Of a DNA stretch of 64,000 bases, positions 5,834 through 63,729 are shown piece by piece; positions within the stretch are counted from its first letter, which is position 1; the number at the start of each line of letters is the position of its first letter. Below the pieces are notes generated by a model, which worked only from the letters and a program-made list of their open reading frames with translations, searched no databases and was not told the origin of the DNA. The position numbers were made by a program, and so were the translations under genes. This DNA is from Pecten maximus (taxonomy: Eukaryota), in contig NC_047018.1 of NCBI RefSeq assembly GCF_902652985.1, positions 12,214,001-12,278,000 on the forward strand, read 5' to 3'.

Positions 5834-6104
5834 AATGGTTACGACTTTAAACAGTTGTAAATCAACTGTACATTGTGATACATTATGCTGAACAATATTT
5901 ATAAAAACTAGAAATAAATCATTGCAGAAAAAATCGGATACTCTGTTGTCAATTTAAGAATTACACAATGTATCTACATTATATGTTAATCGCGATCAAC
6001 GTTAACAATGTCAAAGCAGCATAATTTACATTTCGTACTAATTATATGCTAAATCAAGGTTAATTTGTTGCCAATATGTTGATCATCCATTGTTGGTTTC
6101 GTTA

Positions 6105-6905: not shown

Positions 6906-7592
6906 CAACTCAGAGTTTAATTCTATGTCCAATATCAACAGTTATAATACAATATTATAATAAGATATGATGTCAAACTGTGGCTGTATCCAAATAAAGA
7001 AGAATGATGGCAAACTTGTTATCAAACTTGTGAATTATTAAAGAAAACAGATTTAACACTGATGTGAACTTTTAAATGACTCTTCCTAAAATATGAGTCC
7101 TCCATCAGTTACATTATAAAAACTTCCGACGAAATCTGCCAAATTGCATCTATATCACCTTCTAACCATTATCAAAATAGTCAACCACACAGCGTTCCCA
7201 TCAGAAACATTCACAAAAATAAGATTAAAATCTATTCCGAGAAAGAAAACAGCTCTTCAATATGCGAACATCAGTACGAGTACATGTACATTTTGTTTGT
7301 TAAAACAAGTAAGAATAAAGCGAGAAGGAATAAAGAAAATGGATCAGAATTATGAAATGGCATGACTACATAATCAGGAGAAAGTGAAGATCGGAGATGT
7401 TTACGATAATTAAAAGTAAAAGAATAAAGACGTTCCAAGAGAGAGAAAGCGAAAATGATGGACTTGGGAATAGAATAGCAATACTTTTGTTTTCTTTTGA
7501 AAAATTGTATTTGTTTTTTCAATACAGTATACAATACACAAAATACAACATTACAATAAACCAACTTTCACTCACAGTTCCTCGCAGACTTA

Positions 7593-23928: not shown

Positions 23929-26321
23929 TTTAAGTAAAGGAGAATGTCCGAGAGCTGTCTATTCTTTGAAATAATGGACTGGACGAGGCCGAAGGCCGAG
24001 TCCAGTGCATTATTTCAAAGAAAAGACAGCTTGAGGACCTTCTCCTACTTAAAACATATCCCCCTGTTGCACTTAGTGTACGTACCATTGATATAATTTG
24101 AAAGCTAACAATACTTCTATTTAAGAATGGAAATGTTCTTTGCTTGCCTGATAAACAACAGTTCATGTATGCAGGCATGGGGAAGTATGTTCATTCAGCC
24201 TTGAATAATATTGGACTACTACAGGTAATACTATGAGCAATGTGTGTTTAATCAACCATGAATATTTTTGGACAGGTAAAGGTAAGACATGTAACAAGCT
24301 ATATATAGTAATTGCATGAGCATTTCATGCAATGTCGTTTTATACATCAGAATTCAGACTGTTATTCTCATATAGCCATTTCTGAGGTGAACACTGAAGA
24401 GACAACATGTCTGATTCTGATACAATTTTCATAACTCAGTCGACTGTCGTGGAGCGATTAAGTAAAGGTTCTGATACCGATACTATCCTTAATGATGTAT
24501 TAGACATGCAGGAAAATAACCGCCCAAATTTTGAACTCAAAAGCAGTCTGTTTTCTGACATTTCGTCTGCAGATGATGAAAACCTTCTTCAGTGCTCAAT
24601 GGATATGGAGAGAATGGATACTAGATTCCGAATTCCCTTGAAAGCTCAAGATCTACAGCAAATGGTGGAAAATGGCAAGTCTACTAAAACTGAGAGCAAG
24701 ACACGGTGGGCAATAAACCTGTTTCATAACTGGCAGAAACAGCGCGAACAATTGACAAAGAACAGAAAGTATTCCAATCCAATTCTGAAAATGTCCAATT
24801 CCCTTCTGAATGAAGCCTTAAGTTTTTTCATTGGTGAGGTTAGAAGTGAAGCTGGGTCAGAGTATAGACCAAATACTATTTATGAACTGGTAGTGTCAAT
24901 CCAACATCATTTCAGGACCAATGGACGGTTTATCAGCTTTCTGGATGACCAAAGTTTTGCAGGAATGAAAGCAGTGTTGGATTCCAAAATGAAGGAATTA
25001 TCCAAGAAAGGCATGGGACTACAACGACGACAGGCAGATGTAATCAGCCAAGTACAAGAGGAGGACATGTGGAGAACAAATATCTTGGGATCTGATGCTC
25101 CTCAAAAACTATTGGACACTATGGTGTTCATGATCGGGTTGAATTTTGCTCTGCTAGCAGGTCAGGAACATCGTAATTTACGATTTGGTGGACATTCACA
25201 AATTTGCATCAGAGTGGACAACGAGAATCGTAGATACCTGGAATACACTGAAGATGTGTCAAAAACAAACCGTGGCGTATCCTTCATCGAAAGCTGGACC
25301 CAAAAATTACAAGGGCTTATGAAAATCTAAAACAACCAGAGAGGTGCATTGTGAAGCTCTACACAAAATATACCCAAGCCAGGTGAGTGTAAATCCATCC
25401 CGATCTGCCTTCCTCCACCCCATTCAACTTAAATACAATCTAGAAACAAACAAGCATTTACCTGTAAATATTATCTTAATCAAGACTAAAATTAAATTGT
25501 ACCACCCCCTCCTGTACCAAAATCTGCTGTTGTTTAATATGATATTAAAATCAAAGTGAAACTACTGTGTATACATGTGTACAGTGCAATAGAAATTTAA
25601 AATGCATTTACCTATTGTTTGTAGACCTGACTACTGTAAAACTGATGCGTTTAACCTAAGAGCGAGGAAATACATAAATGGAAATGTATGGTACCAAGAT
25701 GCAGCAGTTGGAGTTCACATACTCCAACAAACAGTAAAACGCCTCTGTGAGCAAGCTGGATTTCAGGGTTTATTTACCAACCACTCTCTCCGCGCAACCG
25801 CAGCAACACGTCTCTATAGTGCCGGAATAGACGAACAGTTGATTTCCGAGAAAACTGACCATCGTTCAAATGCTGTACGTGCTTACAAACGCACCAGTGA
25901 CCAACAGCAATCTGACATGAGTGACATTCTTAGAGGAAACAACGCTAACAGTGTTAAAATTCCCAGAAAGGAAAGTGAAAATAGAGGGAGTACGGAAATT
26001 AATATCGAATCTGGAGGTATCAAAATCAATGTGAAATATTGAAAATGGCTCATGTGATACTATTTCGAAATTCTGTCTGAATATATATACAGCTTGTACA
26101 TGTGATACTATAACGAAATTCTGTTGGATTACAGTATCAATGGATTAATAAAGATGAAGTGTACATTTTTGTTGTTTGAATTATTTTTCCACCCGTCCAA
26201 AAAAACGGTCCATTATTTATGGAAATAATGGACAGTTTGTCCTAATAATGGACTGATAACAGTCCATTATTAGATATAATGGTCTATACAAACAATGGAT
26301 GATGTCAAAGATATGTTTTAA
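23929..26321 (+). mobile_element. Crypton-type tyrosine-recombinase DNA transposon (DUF3504-like), complete ends, inactivated
   Basis: TTTAA direct repeat at both ends (23929-33, 26317-21). It splits a flanking tandem unit gacgttatcgttta|ataacttgta. About 60-bp-arm hairpin at 23929-24053. Single recombinase gene inside. Confidence 0.8.
24407..26042 (+). pseudogene. Tyrosine recombinase (Crypton/DUF3504-like) with one intron and a 1-nt frameshift
   Basis: Exon 24407-25382 has a frameshift near 25277 (restored frame ILHRKLDPKITRAYENLKQPERCIVKLY). Intron 25383-25624 is GT-AG. Exon 25625-26042 carries TNHSLRATAATRL and TDHRSNAVRAYKR. FALLAGQEH has Leu where the catalytic Arg is expected. Confidence 0.82.
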
Positions 26322-27479: not shown

Positions 27480-28800
27480 TACACCCTTTTATCAATGGAC
27501 ATGTCGTGGGACAAAATGCCAAACTTGTTAAACTAACAGATACGGGAATCAAGCAGTGATGGGGAGACGAGCTCCGACGATGATCAGTTTCACGGGGAAA
27601 ATAATGAGGAGATTGCTCGACTGCACACAGGGATAAAACTGGAAGAACTGGGACAGAACCGAAGGCTACAAAACTGAAACATCAAACCGAAATAGTCTGA
27701 AATAGGACAGAGCTTAAGACACAGGAGATAGATACAACAGGAACACGATAATGATTGCAGCAAAATAAGACCAGTTATTTTATCCCCAGTAGGCGTTGCC
27801 AGTCGTTGATCTGGCAGTAACGCGTCTTTCATTCTCAGAGAAAAGGGGGTTATTACTGCCCATCGAGTACTGGATGAGTCTTGAGTTCCCAACATGCAGC
27901 GGTTAGATTCAACTATAAACAGCCTTTTGTTTAAGTTTTTGTTCAGTGAATTTCCTGACCCTTTGGTTTGTGAAGGTCTCGAGTACGGCTTTTCTCTAGA
28001 GTTTGAGATAATCAGGATAGTACATGTAGGATCTCTAGTGACAATCGCAGTGGGCCAGGGAATATAGGCAAGATGTTAGGGTGTATTTGCAGAGGGAACA
28101 GGGAAAAGGTGGGGCTAGAGATCCATTCAGCGAATTACCTTTGAAATGGTCCCTAACGCCATCTCGCCCTTTAGCTGAGTGCCTAAAGCTGGCTCTGATG
28201 AGAGAAGAATCATTTTGGATCTTAGTTTCCCTCCTGGTCTGCAGTAAATGACAATATAATGATCTGAAGTTACTAACAGTACTAGCGGCTGCCAAAACTT
28301 ATCTTTCTTTTTCGAAGAAGAAGAGGGTGCTCATTGTCAGTGACAATGTAGTCTCTTTATCGGTGATCAAATCTGGGTCTACAAGGGACCAGTTCATGCA
28401 AAATTGTCTCAGAGAAATCTAATTTAGTGCAGCCTTAGGGAACTTTGAGGTCAGGGCCGTGCACTCTTCTGGAGTTGAAAATCGCATTCCAGACATGTTG
28501 TCTCGCTGGTGTTGAGGGTCTTCAGTGAAGACTTTTTTTTTATGTCAATATACCCAAGGACAGATTCGATTTTTCGCACTGTTGGTGAGGTCTCTACACC
28601 AAATTGTTTGCTTTATGAGAGTGAATTGTCTATTTTAAGACAGGCTTTCCGAATGGCAGCTAGGGCAGATTTTGCAGGGGATCTGACTATAATTTACACA
28701 CCCAGTGGAAGACCTACATGTTGTTTTGTTGTTATTTTGACGTAGAGGCTGCTCCAGCTTCTCAAAATATCCCCTTCTTTATTTGCATGTACGTATGTTT
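27480..28800 (+). mobile_element. Heavily deleted DIRS/Ngaro-like tyrosine-recombinase retrotransposon remnant
   Basis: EFPDPLVCEGLEYGFSL (pre-RT); RNase H-like LKLLTVLAAAK...RVLIVSDNV...SGSTRDQFMQNCLREI*FSAALGNFEVRAVHSSGVENRIPDMLSRW; recombinase N-terminus NLHTQWKTYMLFCCYF. Confidence 0.75.
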
Positions 28801-28923
28801 GTAGTACCAAATATTGTCAGAGCTCCAGCGGCGTCATTGCATGAGGGATTTTAATCAAACTGCACACAATGATAAAGGACTATAATATTTTAGACACGTT
28901 TGCTTTTCGGGGTTGTTGGGTCA

Positions 28924-31900
28924 ACACTGGGTTTCTCTGGTAAAGTTACATTTGGGAGTGGATACCCATTCCCAAATGTAACTTTACCAGAGAAACCCAG
29001 TAAAGTAACAGTGGGAATAGGTTACACGGGGTTTCTTCAGTAATGTTACAATGGGTAGTGGTTATGTTGTAGGTTCACTTACCTTAGATCCGGGCCTGTC
29101 TTGTCTCGGCTGGGAAGGACCGGTGAAGCCGTCTGTTGAACTCCTTGCAGGGGAATACGTCCGTTCAGTTCGGTATTAAGCATACAACTTACCCGACCAA
29201 AATTCGTCGGTGTCGCTTTATCCGGGAAACCGGTCGCCGGGTTCCAACTCCAGATACAACCACAACACTCTCCCCTTTTTAAGGAACGAGGAGTCTCACA
29301 GGTGCAAAAAAGGAATCATAAAAGTTCAGATACGTCCAATTTTTACATATATGTAAACAGTGGCATTGAAGTCACTTTACTCAGCGACATATTCGGATAA
29401 CCAAACTGGTGATCTCCTACTCCTCACCCTGGGTGGAGGTACGGCCGTCTCCACCTCCCCCTCTTGACCATACTTGAACAGAACAGTGACGTCAAACACT
29501 TCCGTCAGATCGTTTTCAGAGGCCCTTGGGACTTCATCCTCATTGTCCTCCGCCAGAACGCCTTGGCCGTCACTCTCAGTCAAAATATCCTCCTCCTCCT
29601 CCTCCTCCTCCTCCTCCACCATCATCATCATCATCATCATCATTCTGAGGTACCGGAATGTCTTGGCCATCACTCTCAGCCAGCATCACCTCCTCCTCCT
29701 CTCCATTCTGATGCACCGGAGTATAGCCAAGGTTGCTCCTCATTCTCAACAGCCAGACAGGCAATTTCCGTTCACAGCATATCGTCAAACGATGATGATG
29801 CATTACTTGCACAGACTTCCTGTTGCAAATGCGATAGAGAGCTGGAAATAAACATTGTACCACCAGGTAGGGTCCAACCCAGGGTGATTTGAGCTTTGGG
29901 CTCTGCCCAACCTTCCACGAGGTATCTAATTCCAGCCCGTGTTTGACAAGGGAGTCCCAAACATGGCTGGGTACGTTGTTGATTTGTTTAAGGTCTTCTT
30001 ATGTCAGTCTTCAAGTTCCTTTCTTTTCTTGACAATGACCGCAGCAGAAGCTTCGTGGATCTAGGTTATACTTGTTGTTTATCTCTGAGGGGATCTTTCT
30101 TATATCCCCAAGAAGACACTTCATCTATGCCAGACAAAGGTATGGACCTGGGTGTACACCATGTGCACCATCTGACAACAACGACTGCTTATGAGAATAT
30201 ACCTTGATCTTGCCCAGGCACGATATTTCCTATTCCTAATCAGAAAACGGCTGAATTTTAGTGTTTCATGTCCGACCTGCGAATTTAAATTTCGCACTTC
30301 ACTTTCACCAAATCAACTTGGGCAGTTTTTCACTGATCATCGTCATGAGACACATCCGGCTCCTTGTAATCTTTAGATTTTTTCTAGTTAGCAGTGGAGA
30401 TAGTTGGTAGCTCAATGAATTTAATCATTTCCGTACCAGTGTATTTTTCCAGAATGTCTAAAGCTCTTTTGAATTCCAAAACAATATTTACCACCATGGT
30501 ATTCTCAGTTGAATCCCTAATCTTTATGAATTTTCCCTTTTTTTTAGTGAAAACCCTTTACCATCTGACACTAACATCGATATACTAGACGGAGATAAAC
30601 CACTCTGCTCACGTCGAATAGAATTCCGTAGTTACAATAGCAGCAAATATATCATAACAGTTCTTTCATAGCACAATAGTTGATGATATAACCCCACCTA
30701 ACTATGTACGACACAACAAATGTCAATTTCAAATATGGCGCCGACCGCGAGTAGATCTCTATAGCCAGCCTTCCGGGATTAAGAATAAAACTTACTTGAC
30801 CATCGTCGGGTAGCGCCTAATCCAGGAAACTGGTTGCCTGGTTACAACTCCAGATACAACCACAATAGTTACACTGGGTTTCTTCAGTAAAGTTACAGTG
30901 GGGAGTCGTTACATGAGGTTTCTTCAGTAAAATAACAATGGTGAGTGGTTACATTTGGTTTCTTCAGTAATGTTACAGGGGAGAGTGGTTACATCAGGTT
31001 CCTTCACTTATGTTTCAGTAGGGAGAAGTTGCAATGCTTTTTTCAGTAAATATACAGTGGTGTGTTGTTACACAGGGTTTCTTCAGTAATGTTACAGTGG
31101 GGAGTTGTTACACTGGGTTTCTTCAATGATGTGACAGTGGGGAGTTGCTATACTAGGTTTCTTCAGTAATGTTACTGAAGGGAGTGGTTACACTGGGTTT
31201 CTTCAGTAATGTTACAGTGGGGAGTGGATACACTGGGTTTCTTCAGTAATGTTACAATGGGGAGTGGTGACACTGGGTTTCTTCAGTAATGTTACAGTGG
31301 GGAGTGGTTACACTAGGTTTCTTCAGTAATGTTACAATGGGGAGTGGTGACACTGGGTTTCTTCAGTAATGTTACAGTGGGGAGTGGTTACACTGGGTTT
31401 CTTCAGTAATGTTACAGTGGGGAGTGGTTACACTGGGTTTCTTCAATGATGTGACAGTGGGGAGTTGTTATACTGGGTTTATTCAGTAATGTAACAGTGG
31501 GGAGTGGTTACACTGGGTTTCTTCAATGATGTGACAGTGGGGAGTTGTTATACTAGGTTTCTTCAGTAATGTTACAGTGGGGAGTGGTTACACTGGGTTT
31601 CTTCAGTAATGTTACAGTGAGGAGTGGTTACACTGGGTTTCTTCAATGATGTGACAGTGGGGAGTGGTTATACTGGGTTTCTTCAGTAATGTTACAATGG
31701 GGAGTGTTGACACTGGGTTTCTTCAGTAATGTTACAGTGGGGAGTGTTTACACTGGGTTTCTTCAGTAATGTTACAGTGGGGAGTGGTTACACTGGGTTT
31801 CTTCAATGATGTGACAGTGGGGAGTGGTTACACTGGGTTTCTTCAGTAATGTTACAGCGGGGAGTGTTTACACTGGGTTTCTTCAGTAATGTTACAGTAG

Positions 31901-31958
31901 GGAGTCGTTATACTGGGTTTCTTCATTAATGTTACAGTGGGGAGTGGTTACACTGGGT
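28924..31958. repeat. 40-bp satellite interrupted by an LTR element
   Basis: Unit acactgggtttcttcagtaatgttacagtggggagtggtt. A few copies at 28924-29064 (one inverted), main array at 30868-31958. Confidence 0.95.
29065..30867 (-). mobile_element. Internally deleted Gypsy-like LTR retrotransposon
   Basis: 3' LTR 29065-29267 (TG...CA), polypurine tract 29268-29280, partial 5' LTR ~30800-30867, 4-bp TSD GTTA (29061-64, 30868-71). Acidic integrase tail ending PPPRVRSRRSPVWLSEY. Confidence 0.8.
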
Positions 31959-33153
31959 GGAACAATGCAACATGTCTGATTTTCCGATCTCCAAAGACAT
32001 CTTACCGAATTTGTTAGTGATATGTAAACTATTAAATTGCTTTGATGTCGCGCTCTCAAGTTGAAAAAGTTTAAACATTAACATGGAAATCCTCTTTTTT
32101 TCCCCTACAAAGTCTGCCCACTATATCCTTCTTTCTGACTATCAATGTCATATCACGACAGTCCTATGGTTATTTATATATTTTTTACACATTTTGTTTT
32201 CTGTGTGAATTCTTAGTTGATTAAATTAGTTTTTAAATTGAAAACCATTAGAACTTTCCTTTGTCAAATATGTTATTTCATGAAAGTCTCATCGAGCTTT
32301 TGTAAAAATCTCTTCTTGACGGTATGTACATAAATTGAAGTGCTGTGTAAATACAGATCTATAATTATATGATTTATAGATGTTGAGTGTGTGACGTGAT
32401 AACCATTGATATTTGAAATGCAATCATTCATGTACAGCTATATCTTGACCCCACACAAACATTCATGTACAGCTGTATCTCGACCCCACACAAAAATGTC
32501 CTAACAGGATAACCTTTAAATCATATATAAGCAATATATACCTGTATACACACGAACTTTGTGGTGGCAAGTCTAAATAGTAAGTAACATGCTAAATCGA
32601 TATCTAATTTTGTATTCTTTTTTTTTTTTCTTATTACATTACTTGGTTGTTTTTCTTATGAATATACAACTTCTGTATTTTGCGTGATAACATAAAGAGG
32701 ACACATAAAGGAACCGTAATTTTAAGTCAGTATCGATAAAAAAATAAAATTCGAAATCTGAGTGTGGGGGGATAAATATAGCGACAATAAAAGGACAAAA
32801 ATCAACTCACAGGCACAAACTTCTATGAACATTCTGCTACAATGTCATCACAAAAGGTAAACAATCGATCAAAATAAACACCAGCAACAGCGTCATAACA
32901 AATAAACAAAATCGCCAAATAAATAACAACAATATCAACACACTAGCACATTTCTTTACATTGTCATCCGAAATAATTAACAACAGTATGAATATAAAAG
33001 GACTAATTACAAGTGGTGTACAAGTGACACCATACAAGAACGAAATCCACCACTTGCCAACACGTGACTGACAAATCCACTAACTATCACAATACAACGG
33101 CAAATCCACCAAATATCACCGTCAAACGGCAAACTTTACCAATAGTCAACATA

Positions 33154-50750: not shown

Positions 50751-53700
50751 TCAGTTTGTATCGATAAACGCTGGATTTGTTTTTTGTCCGCTGACGGTGG
50801 CCTTGCCGCCAATTGTTTTTGCTGTTTGTACAAGTGCCGTGCTCTGTTCAAAATGTGGCTGTATCTTAATCGCTGTTACCCCAGATTCATCCAAACTCGG
50901 GTTGTTGTCAAAGCCAATCGAAGATGTACCGCTGTCACTGGCGCTGTCCTGAGTGCTACTTCTGACTTTCTCGAACATCTCCTCGACTTTAAACTTTGGT
51001 GTCACACCTATCCGGAAGAAGCCTATTTTTCCATCCTTGATTTTTCGGCAGTCAACTACAGTGGAAGCAAGATTTTCAGGTGATGGACCGTCCGCAAGAA
51101 TTCCGTCACACTGAAAAGAATAAACATCTTCAATTATAACCAACGGATTAGTGTCTTTAGTCATGGTTATGCGACAAATCATTGACGTCGTTTGTACAAT
51201 TCATTAGGTGTACTATTTAGTGAATACATTTACAATATTATCAGGTGTTAATATACTGTCATATATATTAGTGACATACAGTGTTGTGTCGTTTTCTTAC
51301 ATTGTTTACTCCCAGTTTGGCTAGAACCTGAAGGTGGTGGGTGGTGTCTACCTCTCCGGTAGGATTTGCTGCCGTCACTGCTATAGGACCGGTCTGATCA
51401 ATCAGATGACATGTGATAGTTCTGTCCGGAATTCTCAATGCTATACTGTCTGGTTTACCTATAAGTCTCTCGGCCCCTCCTAATCCTAGTGACTTGACCC
51501 ATTCACCTGTTGTAAAAATCATATGCACATAACCAGCAGGAAACAGTTAAACTGTGATACGTGGTATTTTCAGCTTCCAATTATTAATTTATATTAGTAA
51601 CATCACTGCTACCCCTGTTTACGTGTTTACTTGTCCTAGTTGATGGAGACCATATAAAGGCGTTATCGTCGACGTCAGGATCTCAGTATGCGGTATGACG
51701 TCAGGCGTGCGGTATGACGTCAGGCGTACGTTATACTTCTTGATATGCCATTAGCTTAGTTCTCATTTTCAGATTGTGACTTTACCTGGATTTGATTTAG
51801 ATTGGTATGGCGGGTTCCGTCGATGAAGCAGAAAAAGAATATTTTGTTTAATTTTTGACATCCCCTGGAATCGTTTCCTGGTAATATCTTATGTTTGGTT
51901 TTCAGTGCCTGCTATACAGGAAGGACGTAAGAAAAACTGTCTACTGGGTAATTACAATTACTGTCTACTTGGTAATTACAACTGTCTACTGTATAATAAC
52001 ATTTTTATCTACTTGGTAATTACAACTGTCTACTGGGTAAAAACAATTATCTAATTTGTAATTACATTTACTGTCTACTGGATTATAACAATTACTATCT
52101 ACGTGGTAATAACAATTACTATCTACTGGGTAATAACAATTACTATCTACTGGGTAATAATAATTACTATCTACTGAGTAATATCAATTACTGTCTACTG
52201 GGTAATAATAATTACTATCTACTGGGTAATATCAATTACTGTCTACATGTTTAAAACAATTACTAGTTACTATGTAATAACAATTACGCACCTTTGTTGA
52301 GGACTAAGCTGATATTTGAGGGCCACACTTCCTGCATGAATCTCCAACATACATCACCCAAATCGGCGCGAGCATTCTCTATCTGTTTGAGGTTGGAAAT
52401 CCAAACTGACATTGGCCGATCCTCCGCCAGTTTCTTGATATTATAAGCCCTCTGAAACAAAACACACATCTTCGTTACTATAATGTAAGTCACTTTGTGA
52501 AACTTATCTTACCCAGTGAGACCCTAGACCCATAAGTAGTACGTTGAACTCTCTCTGTAACATCGCTTTACTCTCTTATAACTTATATATCTGCATAATC
52601 TTATATGAACGATCGCTAAACTATATTCTAGAACAACGTGTAATAAATATTGCTATGGTTATATCAACTGAAATTCATATATATTTCTTAACCCCACCAT
52701 GACAAACACGGAATGTCCTGTCACGAATATGAACATATCATTTTATACGATCTTGGTTCCTATAGATGTGTTTGTACTCCTTACATATATAGAAACTATA
52801 CCATAGATAAGACATCGTAGATTTACAATAGACTTACATCAGCAATGTTTGTAATGTTTACATTTCAAATAACCCTCTCACGTTTAAACCAGGATGAGCA
52901 ATATAATCGGAAATTCCCAACAAGTTCCATTAAGAACCAAGTGATTTATATTCATTACCTAGAACTTACTTAAGTGTTGTCAACGATATTTCAAGTTCAG
53001 AATACAATTTATCGATAATATTGAAGTTTAGCATCTGTCATCAGCTATGCGACAAATAGATAGATTGTCAAAACACTTTTAGTGACAAACATTCTAATAA
53101 GGTTGAGATGAAATGCTAACTATAAAAGAATGATGACCTCCAGTTCAGGCCTGACTATTGGACTAATATTTCACTATGCTGACGTCAAATTCAGACCTGA
53201 CCAGTGGACTAATATTTCACTATGCTGACGTCAAGTTCAGGCCTGACCAGTGGACTAATATTTCGCTATGCTGACCTCCAGTTCAGGCCTGACTAGTGGA
53301 CTAATATTTCACTATGCTGATGTCCAGTTCAGGCCTGACCAGTGGACTAATATTTCACTATGCTGACGTCCAGTTCAGGCCTGACCAGTGGACTAATATT
53401 TCACTTTGCTGACCTCCAGTTCAGGCCTGACCAGTGGATTAATATTTAACTATGCTGACATTAGTTCAGACCTAACTAGTGGACTAATATTGCACTATGG
53501 TGACCTCCAGTTCAGGCCTGACTAGTGGACTAATATTTAACTATGCTGACGTCAAGTTCAGACCTAACTAGTGGACTAATATTGCACTATGGTGATCTCC
53601 AGTTCAGGCCTGACCAGTGGACTAATATTTCACTTTGCTGACCTCCAGTTCAGGCCTGACCAGTGGATTAATATTTAACTATGCTGACATTAGTTCAGAC

Positions 53701-56700
53701 CTTACTAGTGGACTAATATTGCACTATGGTGACCTCCAGTTCAGGCCTGACTAGTGGACTAATATTTAACTATGCTGACGTCAAGTTCAGACCTAACTAG
53801 TGGACTAATATTGCACTATGGTGATCTCCAGTTCAGGCCTGACCAGTGGACTAATATTTCACTTTGCTGACCTCCAGTTCAGGCCTGACCAGTAGATTAA
53901 TATTTCACTATGCTGATGTCCAGTTTGGGCCTGACAGGTGGGCCGATATTTGCAATTGATTTCGTACACTATTAATTAAAATAGGTTATGCTATTTTCGG
54001 TAATATCATGTTAATACCACGACCGATTTAATTGAATCGTATCTATTTTGAATTTACCTTCTTCACTTGTGGGCTAGTAAATTAAATTTATATCTACTTT
54101 CGATGTCTGCGACCTTACCTCCACTGCCTTTGGGTGGTTGCACGCAGCCACCAATACATACACGGTGTCTGTGGGAATGCCGCAAATACCGCCGTCTTTC
54201 AGAATTTCTGTGAAATATAAATAAAACGAACTTGTACACCATTGTCTTAAAAAACAAATCTGAATGAACATAAAATTTAAATTACTCGAGTTGATTCGCG
54301 CTAATTTAAAAACCTTTTTCTATACTAATATGATGTTTGTGTTTCCTCGTACCTGCTGTTTGTTTCACTCCGGTTGCCCGCCTAGGATCCATGAACAGCG
54401 CCCTGTAGCGATCCGAGTGAAGTTTGCTTACTTGGAGGATAGGTTTTCCCAGTGGAAGAATATCCCTCCCCCAGACATTCCTCAGCATTATTGACAAAAC
54501 TCCGTATAGAAAGATCAGAACATACGCTATAGCAACTGTTTTCTCAAACCCACCATAATTACTAGCTTTTAACCCACGCAGCATGAACGCGACAACGAGA
54601 AGGCAAAACACTGAGGAATTCATCACCCAAATTTTATTAACGGTGGTAGACATTCCGAGAAAAAGCAGACCAGTCACTAGGAAACCAACCAAGCCAACCA
54701 CCAGAGGAACTCCCTCTGATCCTTCAATAACATTTAGTGCTCTTAATGACCCCCAAATTGACCAAAAACTCCCATAAAGAAGGAACGAACAACTTTCAAA
54801 TGTCAGCCCTCTAGAGAAACTTACAAAACCTACGACAAATTGAATAAGACCCCCGAAACCTACGGTCCAAGGAAGGATCAATGGATCTGAACCCGAGGGT
54901 ATCCATACTAGAGAAAATGCAGCTACAGCATTGGCCGCGAATCCTACACTTTGGGAGTCAACATACTTGGAATAACCAAGCATTATATCTTCTGAAAGTT
55001 TATTAGAATATGATGAAACGTCTACAGTTTTTCTCGAATTGCCTATGTTTTGGAATATTGTCAGAATTTCTTTGACTTTCGCCCTTTCTGTGATGTTGCT
55101 ACCCAATGGAAACCCTATTTCCAGTCCTACAAGACTGGTGGTGGTGGCTATTAACCCGTAGATTGACAGGAGAACTCCTAACAAACCAATCACCCCTACA
55201 AATGTGCCCTGTAGTCCATCCACACCTAAAGAAAGAGCAAACAGCGACATCATCAGAAAATATATAGACCTAAACAATTCCAGTTTCACTTCTACTATTG
55301 AAATCAAAAAGAAGAACAAAACCAAGACAGCCGATGTGGGAATAATGAAATCCATTTCTCTCCACAAATAGTTTTCCGCCATTAAACTTGACCCCACACC
55401 TAGCCAGAACAACCCAAATATAATGGCGTTGCCTGCATTGTGAGGATCAGACTGTCTAAGTGACGCAATACCGATGACGATTTGGAAAATACCGGAAGTC
55501 AGCAACCATGGAAAGGAAAAGCGTGTGTCAGAAATGATATTGATAACATAACTAGCAAAAGTTGTAAAACAAACAGCATTAAGAGCATACATCATAATTA
55601 GATGATGCTTAAACAATGATTTATGTGACGTTTTCACATTAGTTTCCAAATTGCCCGGGCCAATAGAATTGAAGTGTTTATAATAAGCGGCTACATTTGA
55701 AAGAGAAAAATAAAGAAAAAACAAAGACAGTAGAATCTGAAGAACTGCGGTTCCTTGTAAACTAACAAACATATTAATGATTTCGAACGTTACCAGAACC
55801 ACAGAGATTACTGAGACAACACTACATGACCGGAAGTCCCTGTTAGTTAGTGAAGTGCCCAGGAAAACGAGAAATACCAGCAGTAAGCCGCCATAACCAG
55901 TAAACAAGGCTTCGTGAGGAGATATGTAGTTCTCAGACGATACATTCTGGGAGTAATTGACCTCTGTCCATATGTGATTGACCCCAACGCTTGACCAGAG
56001 CACTGCCAGACAAAGGACGACTGACTGAAGCAACTGTCTGTGATGGGAGGGTGACGTCACACCTGTAACACCCAGTAAGTAAAGTGAAGAGCATAAATAT
56101 ATTTTAGTACGTTGGTGATAATGTAATACTTATCGAACAGATAGTTACGTTATATACAAAGTTTACCGAAGAGAATTGAATACCGTTATATACAAAGTTT
56201 ACCGAAGAGAATTGAATACTTCTCGAGCAGGTAATATGCGATGAATGTAATAATTGATATATCACAAGTGAAAGTGATTTATCTTAATAAACAGGATACA
56301 TACGTACATTGTTTTGTATACGAAGAAAATCATAACGAAGACAAAATAATTTTGATTTTATTTGACATCGAATAAACACTACAGTTTGTTTGCTGCTTAA
56401 GTAAGAAGCGAATAGATAAATGCCACAGTTTGCTGGCTGATCAAGTAAAAAAAAATTAAACGCCACAGTTTCCTGGCTGATCAAGTAAAATAATTTTTTA
56501 AAAAGCGCCAGTTTTCTGGATGATCAAGTAAAATAAATTAACGCAACAGTTTTCTGGCTAATCAAGTAAAAATATAAATAAATAAATAAATAAATAAACT
56601 CCGCAGATAGTTCGAATATCAAAATGAATAACAACAGCGAACCACTTGTCGCAATAAATTCAACGAAAATAGTGCAAAAATAGCATTGAATGAAATTATT

Positions 56701-56911
56701 TATTTATTTATCACATTATGTACAGTAATACAAACTTACCAGTAAGTAGGAATGTCAGGGAGAGGACTACCAGTGAGGCACCGTACGGTATATTGTCTAT
56801 TACTGCCACAGATCGAGATGTCGTAATAGAATTGACAGTGGTGAGAGCTGAGAGAATGCTGGCCACCAAGAACCCAGCCGCCGCGGTCGAGTCCGCGTTG
56901 ATGCCGCTCAT
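50751..56911 (-). CDS. Polytopic membrane protein: ~3 tandem SatP/Ady2 (GPR1/FUN34/YaaH)-like repeats fused to a C-terminal YrdC/Sua5-like domain, 6 exons, ~898 aa
   Basis: Exons 56911-56740, 56062-54353, 54207-54119, 52451-52292, 51506-51301, 51110-50751, all GT-AG with consistent phases (2697 nt). SatP-like GFGGLIQFVVGFVSFSRGLTFESCSFLLYGSFW and GRDILPLG. YrdC-like LKDGGICGIPTDTVY, VWPSNIS, IALRIP, AVTAANPTG, ASTVVD, FRIG. Confidence 0.88.
51937..52285. repeat. 24-bp minisatellite in intron 4 of the fusion gene
   Basis: Unit actatctactgggtaataacaatt. Confidence 0.9.
53134..53950. repeat. 46-bp minisatellite with a 5-monomer higher-order repeat, in intron 3 of the fusion gene
   Basis: Unit tgacctccagttcaggcctgaccagtggactaatatttcactatgc; the variant pattern recurs every ~229 bp (53403, 53632, 53861). 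Confidence 0.93.
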
Positions 56912-57464
56912 TTTCTTAGGCTTTTGGTTGAAAGTTTAGTGTTGATGATACCCTTCACTTTGTGTACCACTTATATATCAAACAGTGTAGAGTACAGGTT
57001 CAGGTAATACCTAGTCAGCCACTATTACTGTGTGTATTTGTTAGAAGACATGTGGTATCGAAAAACAAACTACTGACGATTTTTTTTCTTCTTCCTGGTT
57101 TGCGAAAGTCGGCCTATGATTGGACTTAAAGTCGCTGTCATAAAAGTACACACACATATATAAACATATGTATTAAGATTAGGGTGGAGTATGTCAGGTA
57201 CATTTAGGTATATTTATTTATCACCGATTTCCTGGTATATACCTCGTGGTGGCGAGACACCCAGGGGGCGGTACAGCTGTAGGTCGTAGTTGGCAACAGG
57301 GAACGCCCCCTTCAGGTCATCAATATTCATTGATAGAATGGTAGATATAACAAACAGTGATGAAAGCAAATCCGTGTAATGTGGGGTATATAAACGGGAA
57401 ACAGATATCAGGCTACTTATATTGACCATTTCTATCCTGAAAAGAATCACTTTTGTGTGTAAAG
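56912..57464. promoter_or_regulatory. Putative bidirectional promoter with two outward-facing TATA boxes
   Basis: Minus-strand TATATAAG at 56977-56970, plus-strand TATATAAA at 57387-57394; 553 bp between the two ATGs; GC-rich and kB-like motifs at 57264-57310. Confidence 0.6.
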
Positions 57465-57627
57465 ATGGAGGAGTCTCGAACGAGCGGTCGCGGGCTTCCC
57501 TTCGCGTCCCTACTCTACAGTGAGCCCGGGGCCCTGGGACTCATGGCCAACATCATGTCCGCTCTGATTGTAGCCATCAGTAACATGGTGATAGGAGACG
57601 AAACAAAACTCACTCTCGTTATAGCAG
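57465..57627 (+). CDS. First coding exon of a second SatP/GPR1/FUN34/YaaH-like membrane protein; the gene continues beyond the window
   Basis: MEESRTSGRGLPFASLLYSEPGALGLMANIMSALIVAISNMV...LVIAG followed by CAG|GTAAGT. YSEPGALGLM resembles the family TM1 signature ANPAPLGL. The phase-1 intron is at a similar position to exon 1 of the divergent gene. Confidence 0.65.
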
Positions 57628-60291: not shown

Positions 60292-63200
60292 TTACATCAT
60301 TCTCTGTTTATTTGCGTGTATAATGAATTTACCTAATCTGTGTAGTTCCTTTATTTTATTTGAGTTCAGTAAATTTAAAACTTTAAAGACAGAAGGTTTG
60401 TACCAGTAATATTTTTTGATAAATTTCTTCCTTATCTCTGAATATTTAGGACATATAAGTAAAAAGTGAAATTCATCCTCAACCTCGTTTTGAGTACAGT
60501 TTATACAAAGTCTATTTTTCCTGTCAATATTTCTACTTCTACCAACTTCTATAGCAAGATTGTGTGCAGACAAGCGTAACTTAGTTATTGCAATTCTATG
60601 TTGTTTATGTAATGACTTGGTTAAATAATATTTTATAGTGACATTGTCTACAAGATACTTATATAAGTCACACTTACTAGAAATACTTAAAGAATTAAAT
60701 ATCGTCTGCTTAGCCTGATCCTCAAGACGCTGTTTAATCAAAGGTAATAATCTGATGTCGGAAGGAGTATGCCTCACCCATATAAAACCCAACCCAAGTT
60801 CAAAAAGTTTCTGTTTTACAAATACTAACCAATTAGATTTTGGATAAACTTTTCCAGTTTCTAGTAACAAAAAACTGTAAACTTCATTCAAGATACAATT
60901 TTCATGACTTAAAAACTTAAACCAATATTTTATCATCCTAAATATGTGCTCATTTGCCAGTGGCAATCGACCTAATTCAACATAAACCATAGCATTACAG
61001 GTAGATTTCTTAACACCAAGTATATTTTTACAAAATTCCAAATGAATTTTTTCTATTACTGTAGAATTATACCTCCCCCATATTTCACAAGAGTAATTTA
61101 AAACACTTCCAACAAATGTATCAAAAAGATTTAACAATGTCTTAATATTTAATTGAAAACGGTTGCATTTGGACCGTAAAGCAAAAAGTGCTTTACGACC
61201 CTGATCAGCCACGTGCTTAACCATATGGGTAAACTTATTATTAAATCTGAACAGGGCACCGAGATAACAAAAATTGTCTACTATATCAATGTTACAGCCA
61301 TTATATTTCCAAAATTCATTGTCTTTTATACGACCACCATTTCTGAAAACAACTATCTTGGTTTTATCCGTATTCACTTCTAGTTTCCATTTTTCGGAGT
61401 ATTCATATAAGTTATTTAAGAGATTTTGAAGACCATCGATTGTTTCAGAGATTAATACTAAATCATCTGCATACAGTAGTAGGAATAAACTCAGTTCTCC
61501 AAAGTCGTAATTGGTGGCACCGTTTTCAATAAAACTATTTTCAAAATCATTAACAAATAAAGAAAAAAGTAACGGGGACAATATTTCGCCTTGCATCAAT
61601 CCGACATTGTTTGTGAAATAATTTGAGCATCTGCCATTAATTAATACACACGACTTTACCAAAGAATAAAGGGACTTAACTGTCTTTAGGAATTTACCTC
61701 TGATGCCCAACTTTGATAATTTATACCACAGACTTACCCTATCAACGTAATCAAATGCCTTACGAAAATCAACAAAACAACAATATAATCTCTTTTTTTC
61801 TGACAAAGTTTTTGAAATAATTGATTGCAAAGCAAAGATAGCGTCCACAGTACTAACTCCAGGACGAAATCCAAATTGAGCGTCAGTTAAAATATTTTGT
61901 TTTGTACATACGTCCAAGAGACGTTTATTAAGTATAGAGGTAAAAAGTTTACATAGACAACTTATCAAACTTATGCCTCTAAAGTTATTTGGGTCCGTAC
62001 AGACACCTTTTTTATGTACAGGTACAATAATTGCAGAGGACCATTCACTTGGGATACATCCTGAATCTAATATATTATTAAATAGTAAATTTAAAACCGG
62101 AAGTAAAAACAATTTTCCCTCAATGAAACATTCATTTAACAATCCGTCTGGACCGTGGGATTTTCCCTTTTTAAGATTAATGATTGATGTTGTTATTTCA
62201 TGGAGTGAAATTGGGTGATCTAGTTCGTCGAATATGACGTCATCACTGATGACGTCATCTATCGCTTCCTCAACATTACTACTACCAGAATTTGCTACTT
62301 GCTTAAAGTGATCAAAAATTTCCGCCATGGACATTTTTGGTTTATTGGGCTTGTTTTTGGCAAAGTTTTTATAAAAACATTTTGGATTGTATTTCCGTAA
62401 AAACTCCAGCCTGTCACCCTCGTAATTTAAATATTGTCTTTTCAATCTAGATTCCAATAATTTATATTGTCTTTTTCTAAGGGTTAGTTCTGTATGGGTT
62501 CTTTCATTTTTGGTATTATTAAAATCATTTAATGCTTTCAAGTATAGTTTACGAAATTTTCGAACTTCATCGTTAAACCATGGTTTATCATCCATGGTCT
62601 TATCTTTTAAAAAATTTACATCAATTGGAGTTTTTTTGGATATATCATCTACAACAACCTTTCGGAAAAATGGATCCATCAAATTCTGTAATTCTTTGGT
62701 AAAATTTTTTGTACAGGTATCAATTGATTCTTGATTAACTTCCCCTGCGATTTTGACATTATCCTTTAATTTATCAGAGTTGATATTCAGAGATTCAATA
62801 AATTGATATTTCAAATCATCATTCCATACATACTTAATATTAATTTTCCCATTAAATTTATCTTCGTAATAAATTGCCTCATTGCGTAAATGTTTAACAA
62901 AAAGTTCTACATGTAACGGGGCGTGGTCAGAAAAACTTGTAAAACTACCAACATTAAACTTTTTGACCAAATCAAATAGAGTGAAAGGCATTAACATATA
63001 ATCAATTACACTCATTCCATTTGTACCACAAAAAGTAAAGTCACTAGAAGCAGATCCAATAGTATCTCTGCCATTTCTGATACGAATACCAGTAGATTTA
63101 CACAAATTTATCAACCTATTACCAAAAACGTTTATACCAGGATCTGGGTTGACCCTTACAGACAGATTTTCATCAGCATCATCACCATTGTATTGAAAAA

Positions 63201-63729
63201 TAGACTCAATATGATTTCTCACATTTTCCTGAATGGTGTCGTATAAGATAAAATCATCAATCGTACGTGTACGGCTATTAAAATCACCAATCAAAATAAC
63301 ACTTTTGGTATCTGAAAGTTCTAGTACTAATGATTCTAACTCCTGGAAAATATCACAGTTATACTGTACATAATATTGTGACGAGCATGGAGGGATATAT
63401 GTAAAAATAACAGTAATGTCTTTATCTTGAGCTATTAATCGGCTATCGATAGTGACCGGTATTAGCGTGTCAAACAAAGGATTTCCAACCGATACATATT
63501 TAGATATCCGATCACTTATCAATAGTACATTACCTCCACCTTGGGTACAACGAGTTAATTTTCTAGGTATGAAAACAGAACTAAAACCGTCAATGGTTAC
63601 AGAATAATCATTGGAGATCCAACATTCGGATAAAAATACAATATCATACGACAAAATGTAACTTTTAAAATTTGGTTCATTTAGCTTCTTGTCAAAACCA
63701 CCATTTATATTCCATGATAATATTTTCAA
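60292..63729 (-). CDS. LINE ORF2: APE endonuclease + reverse transcriptase + C-terminal CCHC finger
   Basis: ILSWNING, FLSECW, IGDFNSR, IDY, SDH (APE); FRGISL, QFGFR, FVDFRKAFD, QGEILSPLLF, LLYADD (RT); CINC...EDEFHFLLIC. The listed start codon is TTG, not ATG. Confidence 0.95.
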   Translation of the reverse strand: MKILSWNINGGFDKKLNEPNFKSYILSYDIVFLSECWISNDYSVTIDGFSSVFIPRKLTRCTQGGGNVLLISDRISKYVSVGNPLFDTLIPVTIDSRLIAQDKDITVIFTYIPPCSSQYYVQYNCDIFQELESLVLELSDTKSVILIGDFNSRTRTIDDFILYDTIQENVRNHIESIFQYNGDDADENLSVRVNPDPGINVFGNRLINLCKSTGIRIRNGRDTIGSASSDFTFCGTNGMSVIDYMLMPFTLFDLVKKFNVGSFTSFSDHAPLHVELFVKHLRNEAIYYEDKFNGKINIKYVWNDDLKYQFIESLNINSDKLKDNVKIAGEVNQESIDTCTKNFTKELQNLMDPFFRKVVVDDISKKTPIDVNFLKDKTMDDKPWFNDEVRKFRKLYLKALNDFNNTKNERTHTELTLRKRQYKLLESRLKRQYLNYEGDRLEFLRKYNPKCFYKNFAKNKPNKPKMSMAEIFDHFKQVANSGSSNVEEAIDDVISDDVIFDELDHPISLHEITTSIINLKKGKSHGPDGLLNECFIEGKLFLLPVLNLLFNNILDSGCIPSEWSSAIIVPVHKKGVCTDPNNFRGISLISCLCKLFTSILNKRLLDVCTKQNILTDAQFGFRPGVSTVDAIFALQSIISKTLSEKKRLYCCFVDFRKAFDYVDRVSLWYKLSKLGIRGKFLKTVKSLYSLVKSCVLINGRCSNYFTNNVGLMQGEILSPLLFSLFVNDFENSFIENGATNYDFGELSLFLLLYADDLVLISETIDGLQNLLNNLYEYSEKWKLEVNTDKTKIVVFRNGGRIKDNEFWKYNGCNIDIVDNFCYLGALFRFNNKFTHMVKHVADQGRKALFALRSKCNRFQLNIKTLLNLFDTFVGSVLNYSCEIWGRYNSTVIEKIHLEFCKNILGVKKSTCNAMVYVELGRLPLANEHIFRMIKYWFKFLSHENCILNEVYSFLLLETGKVYPKSNWLVFVKQKLFELGLGFIWVRHTPSDIRLLPLIKQRLEDQAKQTIFNSLSISSKCDLYKYLVDNVTIKYYLTKSLHKQHRIAITKLRLSAHNLAIEVGRSRNIDRKNRLCINCTQNEVEDEFHFLLICPKYSEIRKKFIKKYYWYKPSVFKVLNLLNSNKIKELHRLGKFIIHANKQRMM

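What the first reader, a model, noticed from the sequence alone, without database searches (positions are those of the whole stretch)
50751..56911. Triple SatP/Ady2-like channel concatemer fused to a YrdC-like domain in an animal
Seen: the membrane part contains one clear family repeat (~54980-54440: SQSVGF...GGLIQFVVG...GLTFE...YGSFW...GRDILPLG), a second recognisable one (~55600-55100: SGIFQIVIG...FGLFW...GFPLG) and a more degenerate N-terminal one (STAAAGF...LAVLW). These are spliced in frame to a YrdC domain. Established: SatP/Ady2 proteins are single ~6-TM units that form hexameric carboxylate channels, known mainly from bacteria, archaea and fungi; YrdC/Sua5 is normally a soluble t6A enzyme. 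Inference: a channel-enzyme or ligand-gated exporter, with itaconate (a succinate analogue) as a plausible cargo. The family may have entered animals by ancient horizontal transfer.
Basis: partly seen in the sequence, partly recalled or inferred. Interest (0 to 1): 0.86.

Follow-up and report, generated by a model that had tools for sequence, protein, structure and literature searches.

The report
Scallop triple SatP channel–YrdC fusion gene
This is a real, expressed scallop gene for a membrane protein made of three fused SatP-type carboxylate-channel units plus a YrdC-like domain; the architecture was already described in vertebrates in 2025, but its conserved position next to the itaconate-making enzyme ACOD1 makes an itaconate-channel role worth testing.

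Summary
Observation confirmed. Window 50751-56911 (minus strand) is Pecten maximus LOC117325260, with 6 GT-AG exons encoding 898 aa. Transcript contigs from 4 runs in 2 studies span the 54353|54207 junction that joins the membrane part to the YrdC part.

Each third of the membrane part matches a single-unit SatP profile (hhalign 83.6, 97.1 and 99.6 %). AlphaFold gives 3x6 helices. Unit 3 superposes on SatP (Z 21.4) and the C-terminal domain on Sua5/TsaC (Z 23).

The architecture is not new. Ghasemi et al. 2025 (bioRxiv 10.1101/2025.05.26.656167) described ~900-aa vertebrate proteins with three SatP/Ato units plus YrdC. The scallop gene is the mollusc orthologue of zebrafish si:ch211-153b23.4 (clade A).

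- A paralogue B (LOC117325261) lies head to head with A; the start codons are 553 bp apart.
- The A/B split predates the mollusc-chordate split, so transfer between protostomes and vertebrates is not needed.
- Clade A has lost the essential Arg of the TsaC KxR motif, while clade B keeps it.
- A or B lies next to an ACOD1/IRG1-like gene in scallop, an unnamed invertebrate, lamprey and two teleosts.
- The zebrafish orthologues rise and fall with irg1l in three published transcriptome data sets.

Itaconate as cargo is therefore plausible but untested.

The parts
50751..56911 (-). Whole coding span of P. maximus LOC117325260 (clade A triple SatP-YrdC protein, 898 aa)
   Evidence: Database protein P0001 maps exon by exon; splice sites read; RNA contigs.
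56740..56911 (-). Exon 1 (aa 1-57 plus 1 nt): first two helices of unit 1
   Evidence: The E1/E2 junction is spanned by a contig of run X2.
54353..56062 (-). Exon 2, 1710 nt: rest of unit 1, unit 2, linker, unit 3 and the start of the YrdC domain
   Evidence: A giant exon ending at the membrane/YrdC boundary is also seen in oyster, argonaut, pipefish, Astyanax and parrot orthologues.
55665..56062 (-). Unit 1, exon-2 part (aa 59-190; unit 1 is aa 6-190 with exon 1): degenerate SatP-like 6-helix unit
   Evidence: hhalign against the SatP profile 83.6 %, E 8e-6. AF2 helices 6-33, 40-60, 67-94, 106-128, 132-154, 161-190. UreI 6nsj Z 14.5 on aa 9-186.
55128..55625 (-). Unit 2 (aa 204-369): recognisable SatP-like unit; keeps G..Q..G and FGLFW (Tyr replaced by Phe)
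   Evidence: hhalign 97.1 %, E 7e-11; six AF2 helices 204-369.
54444..54968 (-). Unit 3 (aa 423-597): canonical SatP-like unit with the GG..Q..G, YGSFW and LPLGKP motifs
   Evidence: hhalign 99.6 %, E 2e-24. SatP 5ys3/5zug are the top PDB sequence hits. VIA Z 21.4, rmsd 2.5 A, 173 of 182 residues. Foldseek TM 0.83 to 5zug.
54119..54207 (-). Exon 3 (aa 628-657): start of the Pfam YrdC match, PTDTVY motif
   Evidence: PF01300 24 bits on this exon alone. The junction 54207|54353 is spanned in 4 runs.
52292..52451 (-). Exon 4 (aa 658-710): carries the altered KxR site (K663-K-L665 ... D-R-P)
51301..51506 (-). Exon 5 (aa 711-779): SxN site. The reference allele reads A756 and V763; RNA contigs of all 4 runs read S756 and A763.
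50751..51110 (-). Exon 6 (aa 780-898 plus stop): end of the YrdC domain (to about aa 837, window 50937) and a low-confidence C-terminal tail
   Evidence: AF2 pLDDT below 50 for aa 837-898.
56912..57464 (.). 553-bp region between the start codons of A (minus) and paralogue B (plus): candidate bidirectional promoter
   Evidence: Sequence read. The same head-to-head layout occurs in oyster with 356 bp.
57465..57627 (+). Exon 1 of paralogue B (LOC117325261, P0101, 862 aa); the rest of B lies beyond the window end
   Evidence: ORF equals the N-terminus of P0101. Donor site read. The remaining B exons are in L008.

Best explanation
The gene encodes the scallop orthologue of the animal 'Ato/SatP x3 + YrdC' protein family, clade A (zebrafish si:ch211-153b23.4 type).

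Shown here:
- It is one spliced, expressed mRNA.
- The protein has 18 transmembrane helices arranged as three tandem SatP-fold units. Unit 3 is canonical, unit 2 intermediate and unit 1 degenerate.
- A YrdC/Sua5-fold domain follows. It is the most conserved part of the protein.

Inferred:
- Three fused units make half of the six-unit ring that bacterial SatP builds from six monomers, so two protomers (A+A or A+B) would complete a ring.
- At least unit 3 keeps its own narrow pore for small carboxylate anions.
- The YrdC-like domain should sit on the cytosolic face, like the SatP termini. In clade A it has lost the Arg of the essential KxR motif, so it most likely binds a nucleotide or adenylate as a regulatory or partner module rather than making threonylcarbamoyl-AMP. 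Paralogue B, transcribed divergently from a start codon 553 bp away, keeps KxR and SxN and may be the catalytic partner.
- The most likely cargo is itaconate, or a close derivative, made by the ACOD1/pIRG1 gene that lies in the same conserved neighbourhood.

My odds: real fused gene with this architecture 0.97; conducts small carboxylates 0.6; itaconate is the physiological cargo 0.35-0.4.
For: Gene and fusion:
- Exon map and GT-AG sites.
- RNA contigs from 4 runs in 2 studies span every junction.

Three units:
- hhalign of each third against a single-unit SatP profile gives 83.6, 97.1 and 99.6 %.
- The AF2 model (pLDDT 76, pTM 0.70) has 3x6 helices.
- SatP 5ys3 gives Z 21.4, and 5zug gives TM 0.83.
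- UreI gives Z 14.5 on unit 1.
- The pore-constriction Tyr of YGSFW is kept in unit 3.

YrdC domain:
- PF01300 scores 108 bits.
- Sua5/TsaC2 give Z 22-23.
- Identity scallop to vertebrate is 59-70 % here, against 17-44 % in the membrane units.
- KxR is lost in all clade A sequences and kept in all clade B sequences. K50 and R52 are essential (PMC2685093).
- A canonical YRDC gene lies elsewhere in the genome.

Family:
- Orthologues with the same architecture occur in molluscs, amphioxus, fish, reptiles and birds.
- The tree places the scallop gene in clade A.
- The architecture is published.

Itaconate link:
- An ACOD1 orthologue lies at window 13902-15607 (E 3e-90 to human ACOD1).
- MmgE/PrpD genes lie next to A or B in pipefish, clownfish, lamprey and an unnamed invertebrate contig.
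- Zebrafish irg1l, b23.3, b23.4 and b23.5 co-vary (r 0.65-0.90, with irg1l against each of the three at 0.86-0.90) and are co-listed in infection and PFOS data sets.
- Metazoan pIRG1/IRG1L has the same odd distribution: molluscs, amphioxus, lamprey and non-mammalian jawed vertebrates. 'YrdC' genes were noted as syntenic with it (10.1101/2022.06.17.496652).
Against: - No transport, binding or localisation data exist for any member of the family.
- The scallop protein itself scores below the Pfam gathering threshold for PF01184 (18.5-20.2 bits against 25).
- The NPAPLGL signature of AceTr transporters is absent from all three units of A.
- Units 1 and 2 have lost most pore motifs and may be structural only.
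- In scallop, ACOD1 is about 35 kb away with transposons in between. In Astyanax and parrot no ACOD1-like gene lies within 10 kb of A.
- The co-expression could reflect a shared inflammatory programme; sult5a1 correlates equally well.
- Mammals make and export itaconate without this family.
- The IRG1 preprint reports zebrafish IRG1L in the mitochondrial matrix, whereas A shows no obvious presequence.
- The ring-of-two idea is a hypothesis taken from the literature and was not tested here.
Confidence: 0.45

Rival explanations
1. It is a general short-chain carboxylate or anion channel (acetate, lactate, succinate or another small anion), as for SatP and Ato1. The link to ACOD1 would be only inherited gene order plus a shared inflammatory promoter programme, with no itaconate specificity.
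For: The characterised family members carry acetate, succinate or lactate (literature summarised). Unit 3 keeps the SatP motifs. sult5a1 correlates with irg1l as well as the b23 genes do. The IRG1 preprint saw 'no obvious functionally related clustering'.
Against: Neighbourhood with ACOD1-like genes is kept across roughly 550 My in five genomes. The taxon distribution matches pIRG1/IRG1L, including the loss in mammals. That is more than chance linkage would predict.
Confidence: 0.25
2. The conserved core is the YrdC-like domain acting as a membrane-tethered adenylate-forming or carbamoylating enzyme, or as a sensor. The SatP-derived units would be mainly an anchor or substrate funnel with little or no conductance of their own. 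The protein would then belong to a pathway that modifies itaconate or another metabolite together with the neighbouring 2OG-oxygenase, VOC and GAT genes.
For: The YrdC domain is far more conserved than the membrane units (59-70 % against 17-44 %). Units 1 and 2 are degenerate. YrdC-like domains in HypF and TobZ make carbamoyl-adenylate (structural hits). The syntenic VOC, 2Fe(II)-oxy and GAT genes are reported, and a PhyH-like exon lies in the window.
Against: Clade A lacks the essential Arg of KxR. Unit 3 retains the SatP pore motifs under purifying selection from scallop to birds. No product is known.
Confidence: 0.2
3. The fusion is an annotation or read-through artefact of two neighbouring genes, or the sequence is microbial contamination or a recent horizontal transfer.
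For: SatP and YrdC are separate genes in microbes, and the scallop membrane part is weak against Pfam.
Against: Spliced RNA contigs join both parts in 4 runs. The gene has five GT-AG introns, and a LINE sits inside the neighbouring paralogue's intron. Orthologues with the same exon layout occur in oyster, argonaut, fish and bird. The tree follows species phylogeny.
Confidence: 0.01

Closest known systems
Vertebrate 'ATO' proteins with three Gpr1/Fun34/YaaH units and a C-terminal Sua5/YciO/YrdC domain (Ghasemi et al. 2025, bioRxiv 10.1101/2025.05.26.656167; zebrafish si:ch211-153b23.4 and .3)
   Same: Both are about 900 aa with three 6-helix SatP-fold units followed by a YrdC domain. The scallop protein groups with the b23.4 clade in the tree. 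The giant membrane exon and the first YrdC exon are shared.
   Different: - It is a mollusc member. [quoted passage not shown] Here both paralogue clades hold many molluscs as sister groups to the vertebrates, plus amphioxus.
- The paper does not mention ACOD1/IRG1, synteny, or the KxR difference between the two clades.
Bacterial SatP/YaaH (PDB 5ys3, 5zug) and fungal Ato1/Ady2 (AceTr family, PF01184)
   Same: Unit 3 has the same fold (Z 21.4, rmsd 2.5 A over 173 residues). It keeps the GG..Q..G, YG.FW and LP.G.P motifs.
   Different: - Three units are fused in one chain instead of six separate monomers.
- The NPAPLGL signature is missing.
- Units 1 and 2 are degenerate.
- A cytosolic domain has been added.
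- Pfam scores below threshold for the scallop sequence.
TsaC/YrdC and Sua5 threonylcarbamoyl-AMP synthases (PDB 1hru, 2eqa, 6f89, 9dsv)
   Same: The fold matches (Z 17-23). PF01300 scores 108 bits. The PTDTVY, R-x-P-D, SxN (in transcripts) and STV(V)D motifs are kept.
   Different: - The Arg of KxR is replaced by L, Q, D or H throughout clade A.
- The domain is tethered to a membrane protein.
- A separate canonical YRDC gene exists in the scallop genome.
Helicobacter pylori UreI urea channel (PDB 6nsj)
   Same: It has the same 6-helix unit fold as unit 1 (Z 14.5, rmsd 2.6 A, 158 residues) and is also a hexameric ring of single-pore units.
   Different: There is no detectable sequence relationship (10 % identity), and Z 14.5 lies near the range seen for unrelated helical bundles.

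Membership tests
AceTr / Gpr1_Fun34_YaaH (PF01184) | Score at or above the Pfam gathering threshold (25 bits) | tested here: not met
   The scallop protein scores 18.5-20.2 bits on unit 3 only. The pipefish orthologue reaches 32.9 bits and scallop paralogue B 29.9 bits.
AceTr / Gpr1_Fun34_YaaH (PF01184) | Six-helix SatP fold | tested here: met
   Unit 3 against 5ys3_B gives Z 21.4, rmsd 2.5 A, 173 of 182 residues, and TM 0.83 to 5zug. Units 1 and 2 have six helices each and hhalign 83.6 % and 97.1 % to a single-unit profile.
AceTr / Gpr1_Fun34_YaaH (PF01184) | N-terminal NPAPLGL(M/S) signature | tested here: not met
   The aligned stretch in unit 3 reads D-S-Q-S-V-G-F, and units 1 and 2 are also divergent. 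Paralogue B keeps EPGALGL and EPMGLGY.
AceTr / Gpr1_Fun34_YaaH (PF01184) | YG.FW motif carrying the pore-constriction Tyr (Y72 of SatP) | tested here: met
   Unit 3 reads YGSFW, with Y487 invariant in 12 orthologues. Unit 2 reads FGLFW and unit 1 has lost the motif.
AceTr / Gpr1_Fun34_YaaH (PF01184) | Hexameric ring and carboxylate conduction | not testable with these tools
   Needs structural or flux experiments. A 2 x 3 ring is a literature hypothesis.
Sua5/YciO/YrdC (PF01300) | Pfam score above threshold and the YrdC alpha/beta fold | tested here: met
   108.3 bits over aa 628-808. Sua5/TsaC2 give Z 22-23, and E. coli YrdC 1hru gives Z 17.2.
TsaC/YrdC subfamily (t6A TC-AMP synthase) | Strictly conserved K50 and R52 (KxR), essential for function | tested here: not met
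   The Lys is kept (K663), but the Arg position is L in scallop and Q, D, H or L in all 17 clade A sequences with an aligned residue here (one partial sequence lacks the column). All 16 clade B sequences keep K-x-R. The criterion comes from PMC2685093.
TsaC/YrdC subfamily (t6A TC-AMP synthase) | SxN motif | tested here: inconclusive
   The reference allele reads A-A-N (A756). RNA contigs of all 4 runs read S-A-N, and almost all other clade A and B sequences keep SxN.
Animal triple-Ato + YrdC family (Ghasemi et al. 2025) | About 900 aa, three consecutive 6-helix units and a C-terminal YrdC domain, with orthology to the vertebrate clade | tested here: met
   898 aa with 3x6 helices plus YrdC. 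It groups with si:ch211-153b23.4-type proteins at 100 % SH-aLRT.

The most novel reading that the evidence does not exclude
A and B have been encoded side by side since before the mollusc-chordate split. They lie head to head in bivalves and in an unnamed invertebrate, in tandem in amphioxus, and on one BAC clone in zebrafish. On this reading they assemble as a heterodimer whose 3+3 units form one SatP-like six-unit ring. That ring would be the dedicated transport module, and through B's intact YrdC site possibly the adenylating module, of an ancient animal itaconate gene cluster: pIRG1/IRG1L plus 2OG-oxygenase, VOC and GAT genes. Therian mammals would have lost the module together with IRG1L.
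Probability: 0.2. Interest if true: 0.85.

Novelty: new member of a known kind. Interest (0 to 1): 0.5.

Why it matters
Itaconate is a central immunometabolite, and how it crosses membranes is still being worked out in mammals.

Non-mammalian animals carry a conserved neighbourhood in which the itaconate synthase sits beside two SatP-derived channel genes. One preprint has described those genes only as 'YrdC' neighbours of IRG1. Another has described them as Ato-YrdC fusions of unknown function. Joining the two observations gives a concrete candidate, testable in zebrafish, oyster or scallop, for an itaconate channel and perhaps an activating enzyme.

It would also be a rare case of a metabolic gene cluster kept across bilaterians.

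The gene itself is an ordinary orthologue of a family that is already described.

Tried and rejected
- **Read-through or mis-annotation:** rejected by spliced RNA contigs.
- **Contamination or recent transfer:** rejected by introns, transposons, shared exon layout and the tree.
- **Transfer between vertebrates and protostomes (suggested in the 2025 preprint):** not supported. Molluscs and vertebrates are reciprocal sister groups in both clades, and amphioxus has both types.
- **Microbial donor:** the nearest single-unit relatives are a mix of bacteria, archaea, a protist transcript and metagenome proteins, which is not informative.
- **Loss of the SxN serine in scallop:** this turned out to be the reference allele only, since transcripts carry Ser.
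- **DJ-1/PfpI neighbour:** it lies head to head with A in fish and bird, but none lies near the gene in scallop.
- **Earlier notes by place:** nothing found.
- **Not run:**
  - Complex prediction.
  - A second structure job for units 1 and 2 alone. Their SatP fold therefore rests on hhalign, helix count and the UreI match.
  - Joining the window's exons into a CDS. Whole-protein work used the database protein P0001; window exons were searched by reference and codons were only looked up singly.

Full report
**What is there.** The window is Pecten maximus DNA. The 584-codon ORF at 54306-56060 (minus strand) is 99 % identical to LOC117325260, an 898-aa 'uncharacterized protein' (P0001).

Mapping P0001 back to the window and reading the boundaries gives six exons, all with GT-AG introns:
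- E1 56911-56740
- E2 56062-54353
- E3 54207-54119
- E4 52451-52292
- E5 51506-51301
- E6 51110-50751

Whole-protein analyses used the database protein P0001, and window exons were searched by reference.

**Is the fusion real?** Yes. Transcript contigs from four public runs in two studies were laid on window 50950-56911.
- They skip exactly 51110|51301, 51503|52289 (cut +3), 52451|54119 and 54207|54353, each with CT..AC ends, which is GT..AG on the minus strand.
- One run also spans 56060|56738.
- One 1842-nt contig runs from the last exon into 829 nt of the membrane exon.

**Three SatP-like units.**
- Pfam sees Gpr1_Fun34_YaaH only weakly in the scallop protein: 18.5-20.2 bits against a gathering score of 25, over aa 452-556.
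- The pipefish orthologue passes at 32.9 bits over nearly the whole model.
- A phmmer scan of 1.8 billion representatives found single-unit SatP-type proteins of 190-270 aa. They align to query residues about 365-550, which is unit 3. Those tested match PF01184 at 64-143 bits.
- I cut alignments of clade A and clade B into thirds and compared each with a profile of 13 single-unit relatives. The hhalign probabilities were:
  - A1 83.6 % (E 8e-6), A2 97.1 %, A3 99.6 %
  - B1 99.0 %, B2 98.5 %, B3 98.3 %
- The best cross matches are A1-B1, A2-B2 and A3-B3, so the triplication is older than the A/B duplication.
- AlphaFold2 on a 40-sequence alignment (pLDDT 76, pTM 0.70) gives 18 long helices in three groups of six (aa 6-190, 204-369, 428-588), followed by an alpha/beta domain at 613-837.
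- Foldseek finds SatP 5zug (TM 0.83, rmsd 2.8 A) as the only significant membrane-protein family.
- VIA-align places 5ys3_B on aa 423-597 (Z 21.4, rmsd 2.5 A, 173 of 182 residues). It places the UreI urea channel on aa 9-186 (Z 14.5).
  - Unit 3 keeps GG..Q..G, YGSFW and LPLGKP.
  - Unit 2 keeps G..Q..G and FGLFW.
  - Unit 1 keeps little beyond a Trp and the closing P-G.
- The NPAPLGL signature is absent from all three units of A.

**The YrdC-like domain.**
- PF01300 scores 108 bits, and Sua5/TsaC2 structures give Z 22-23.
- It is the most conserved part of the protein. Identity from scallop to oyster, chiton, amphioxus, fish, bird and gecko is 59-70 %, against 28-44 % for unit 3 and 17-33 % for units 1 and 2.
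- The TsaC/YrdC subfamily is defined by strictly conserved and essential K50 and R52 (El Yacoubi et al. 2009, PMC2685093).
- In every clade A sequence with an aligned residue there, the Lys column is K (apart from a degenerate frog copy), while the Arg position is L, Q, D, H or E. All clade B sequences read K-x-R-P.
- The SxN serine is Ala in the reference scallop allele, but all four RNA runs read Ser at codon 756 and Ala at codon 763. That is an allele, not a family trait.
- A canonical YRDC gene lies on another chromosome, so t6A synthesis does not depend on this gene.

**A second gene, head to head.**
- Whole-genome scans found a second SatP+YrdC gene just to the right. It is LOC117325261 (P0101, 862 aa).
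- Its first exon is inside the window at 57465-57627 on the plus strand.
- The two start codons are 553 bp apart.
- A LINE at 60292-63729 sits in B's first intron.
- In B, units 1 and 2 are the canonical ones and unit 3 is degenerate.

**Family and history.**
- Clade A (zebrafish si:ch211-153b23.4 type) and clade B (b23.3 type) each contain chitons, cephalopods, gastropods and bivalves, and vertebrates from fish to birds. Clade B also includes lamprey.
- A 40-sequence maximum-likelihood tree separates A from B at 100 % SH-aLRT. Within each clade, molluscs and vertebrates are reciprocally monophyletic at 98-100 %.
- Amphioxus has a B-type and an A-type gene in tandem.
- Oyster has B and A head to head, 356 bp apart.
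- An unnamed invertebrate contig shows the same head-to-head layout.
- The layout 'small first exon, giant membrane exon ending at the YrdC boundary, then a 30-34-aa exon' is shared by scallop, oyster, pipefish, Astyanax and parrot; argonaut shares the first two of these, its 30-34-aa exon not being recovered.
- This fits vertical descent from a bilaterian ancestor that already had both genes. It does not fit transfer between protostomes and vertebrates.
- How the family first reached animals is open, because the nearest single-unit relatives are taxonomically mixed.

**What is already known.**
- Ghasemi et al. 2025 (bioRxiv 10.1101/2025.05.26.656167, also PMC13316224) describe vertebrate 'ATO' proteins of about 900 aa. 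These have three 6-helix Gpr1/Fun34/YaaH units and a C-terminal Sua5/YciO/YrdC domain, fall into two clades, and are absent from mammals. A few protostome homologues are mentioned, and a dimer is proposed to form a six-unit ring.
- They do not mention IRG1, itaconate, synteny or molluscs.
- The architecture is therefore not new, and the scallop gene is a new member.

**The itaconate lead.**
- The window carries an ACOD1/IRG1 orthologue at 13902-15607 (PF03972 and PF19305; E 3e-90 to human ACOD1).
- It also carries a weak PhyH-type 2OG-oxygenase exon at 5263-5337.
- MmgE/PrpD genes flank the family elsewhere:
  - 9 kb downstream of A in pipefish
  - head to head with B at about 1.3 kb in clownfish
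  - head to head with B at about 1.1 kb in lamprey, with CLN5 on the other side
  - 6.5 kb from A in the unnamed invertebrate contig
- None lies within 10 kb of A in Astyanax or parrot.
- In zebrafish, irg1l, b23.4 and b23.5 are neighbours in the heat map of Shigella-induced genes (PMC6980646).
- irg1l, b23.4 and b23.5 are among the top five genes up-regulated by PFOS (PMC9228135).
- Log-fold changes over 18 conditions correlate at r 0.65-0.90 among irg1l, b23.3, b23.4 and b23.5, with irg1l against each of the three at 0.86-0.90 (PMC8877790). sult5a1 correlates about as well, so this may be a wider inflammatory module.
- An IRG1-evolution preprint (10.1101/2022.06.17.496652) reports several relevant points:
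  - Metazoan IRG1 occurs only in molluscs, amphioxus, lamprey and jawed vertebrates.
  - IRG1L is lost in therian mammals.
  - The authors saw no obvious functional clustering and did not recognise the channel part.
- The taxon distribution of the A/B family matches pIRG1/IRG1L. In the library I could search, no paper connects the two observations.

**Verdict.**
The architecture is right but already published. Itaconate cargo is a reasonable, testable inference. Horizontal transfer is unsupported. An enzymatic role is doubtful for this paralogue.
- The mechanism I favour is a SatP-type half-ring that pairs with a second protomer, possibly B. It would conduct small carboxylates, most likely itaconate, with a non-TsaC nucleotide-binding YrdC domain on the cytosolic side.
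- Everything beyond fold, expression, synteny and co-expression is inference.

Noticed in passing
window 13902-15607 (+): Two-exon stretch of an ACOD1/IRG1 orthologue (MmgE_PrpD N and C domains; E 3e-90 to human cis-aconitate decarboxylase). It is the only such gene found in the genome scan.
   Followed up: partly
window 5263-5337 (+), with ORFs at 5483-6970: Weak PhyH-type 2OG-Fe(II) oxygenase exon (27 bits). It may correspond to the '2Fe(II) oxy' gene reported as syntenic with pIRG1/IRG1L. A phytanoyl-CoA-dioxygenase-like gene is also induced in the zebrafish infection data.
   Followed up: no
window 51301-51506 (exon 5): The reference allele differs from the RNA contigs of all four runs at 4 listed sites in 206 nt (R739S, A756S, V763A and one silent; a fifth difference counted in the contig pieces is not listed). 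That is several times the density seen in exon 2. A different scallop species (P0004) shares the reference-type A756 and V763, which hints at an old or converted haplotype.
   Followed up: partly
window 60292-63729 (-) and L008 1775-2794 (-): A full-length LINE ORF2 (endonuclease plus reverse transcriptase, 1145 aa) and a 339-aa coiled-coil ORF sit inside intron 1 of paralogue B.
   Followed up: no
window 24407-26042 (+): Crypton-like element: ORFs with QRICH1 and DUF3504 domains and a tyrosine-recombinase (phage integrase) domain, lying between ACOD1 and gene A.
   Followed up: no
L009 4183-7862, L010 2876-7054, L011 3618-6720: In pipefish, Astyanax and parrot a 224-aa gene lies head to head with gene A; its product hits DJ-1/PfpI in Astyanax and weakly in pipefish, with no Pfam hit on record for the parrot one. 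It is probably zebrafish si:ch211-153b23.5 and the 'GAT' gene of the IRG1 synteny paper. No counterpart lies near the scallop gene.
   Followed up: partly
P0163 (newt) and P0077 (frog), clade A: Amphibian clade A copies have badly degraded YrdC motifs and long branches, which suggests relaxed constraint or pseudogenisation in amphibians.
   Followed up: no
L017 (lamprey), gene at 28117-32725: CLN5 lies just downstream of lamprey gene B, and an ACOD1-like gene lies upstream. From memory, ACOD1 and CLN5 are neighbours in human. If so, B once sat between them and was lost in mammals.
   Followed up: no
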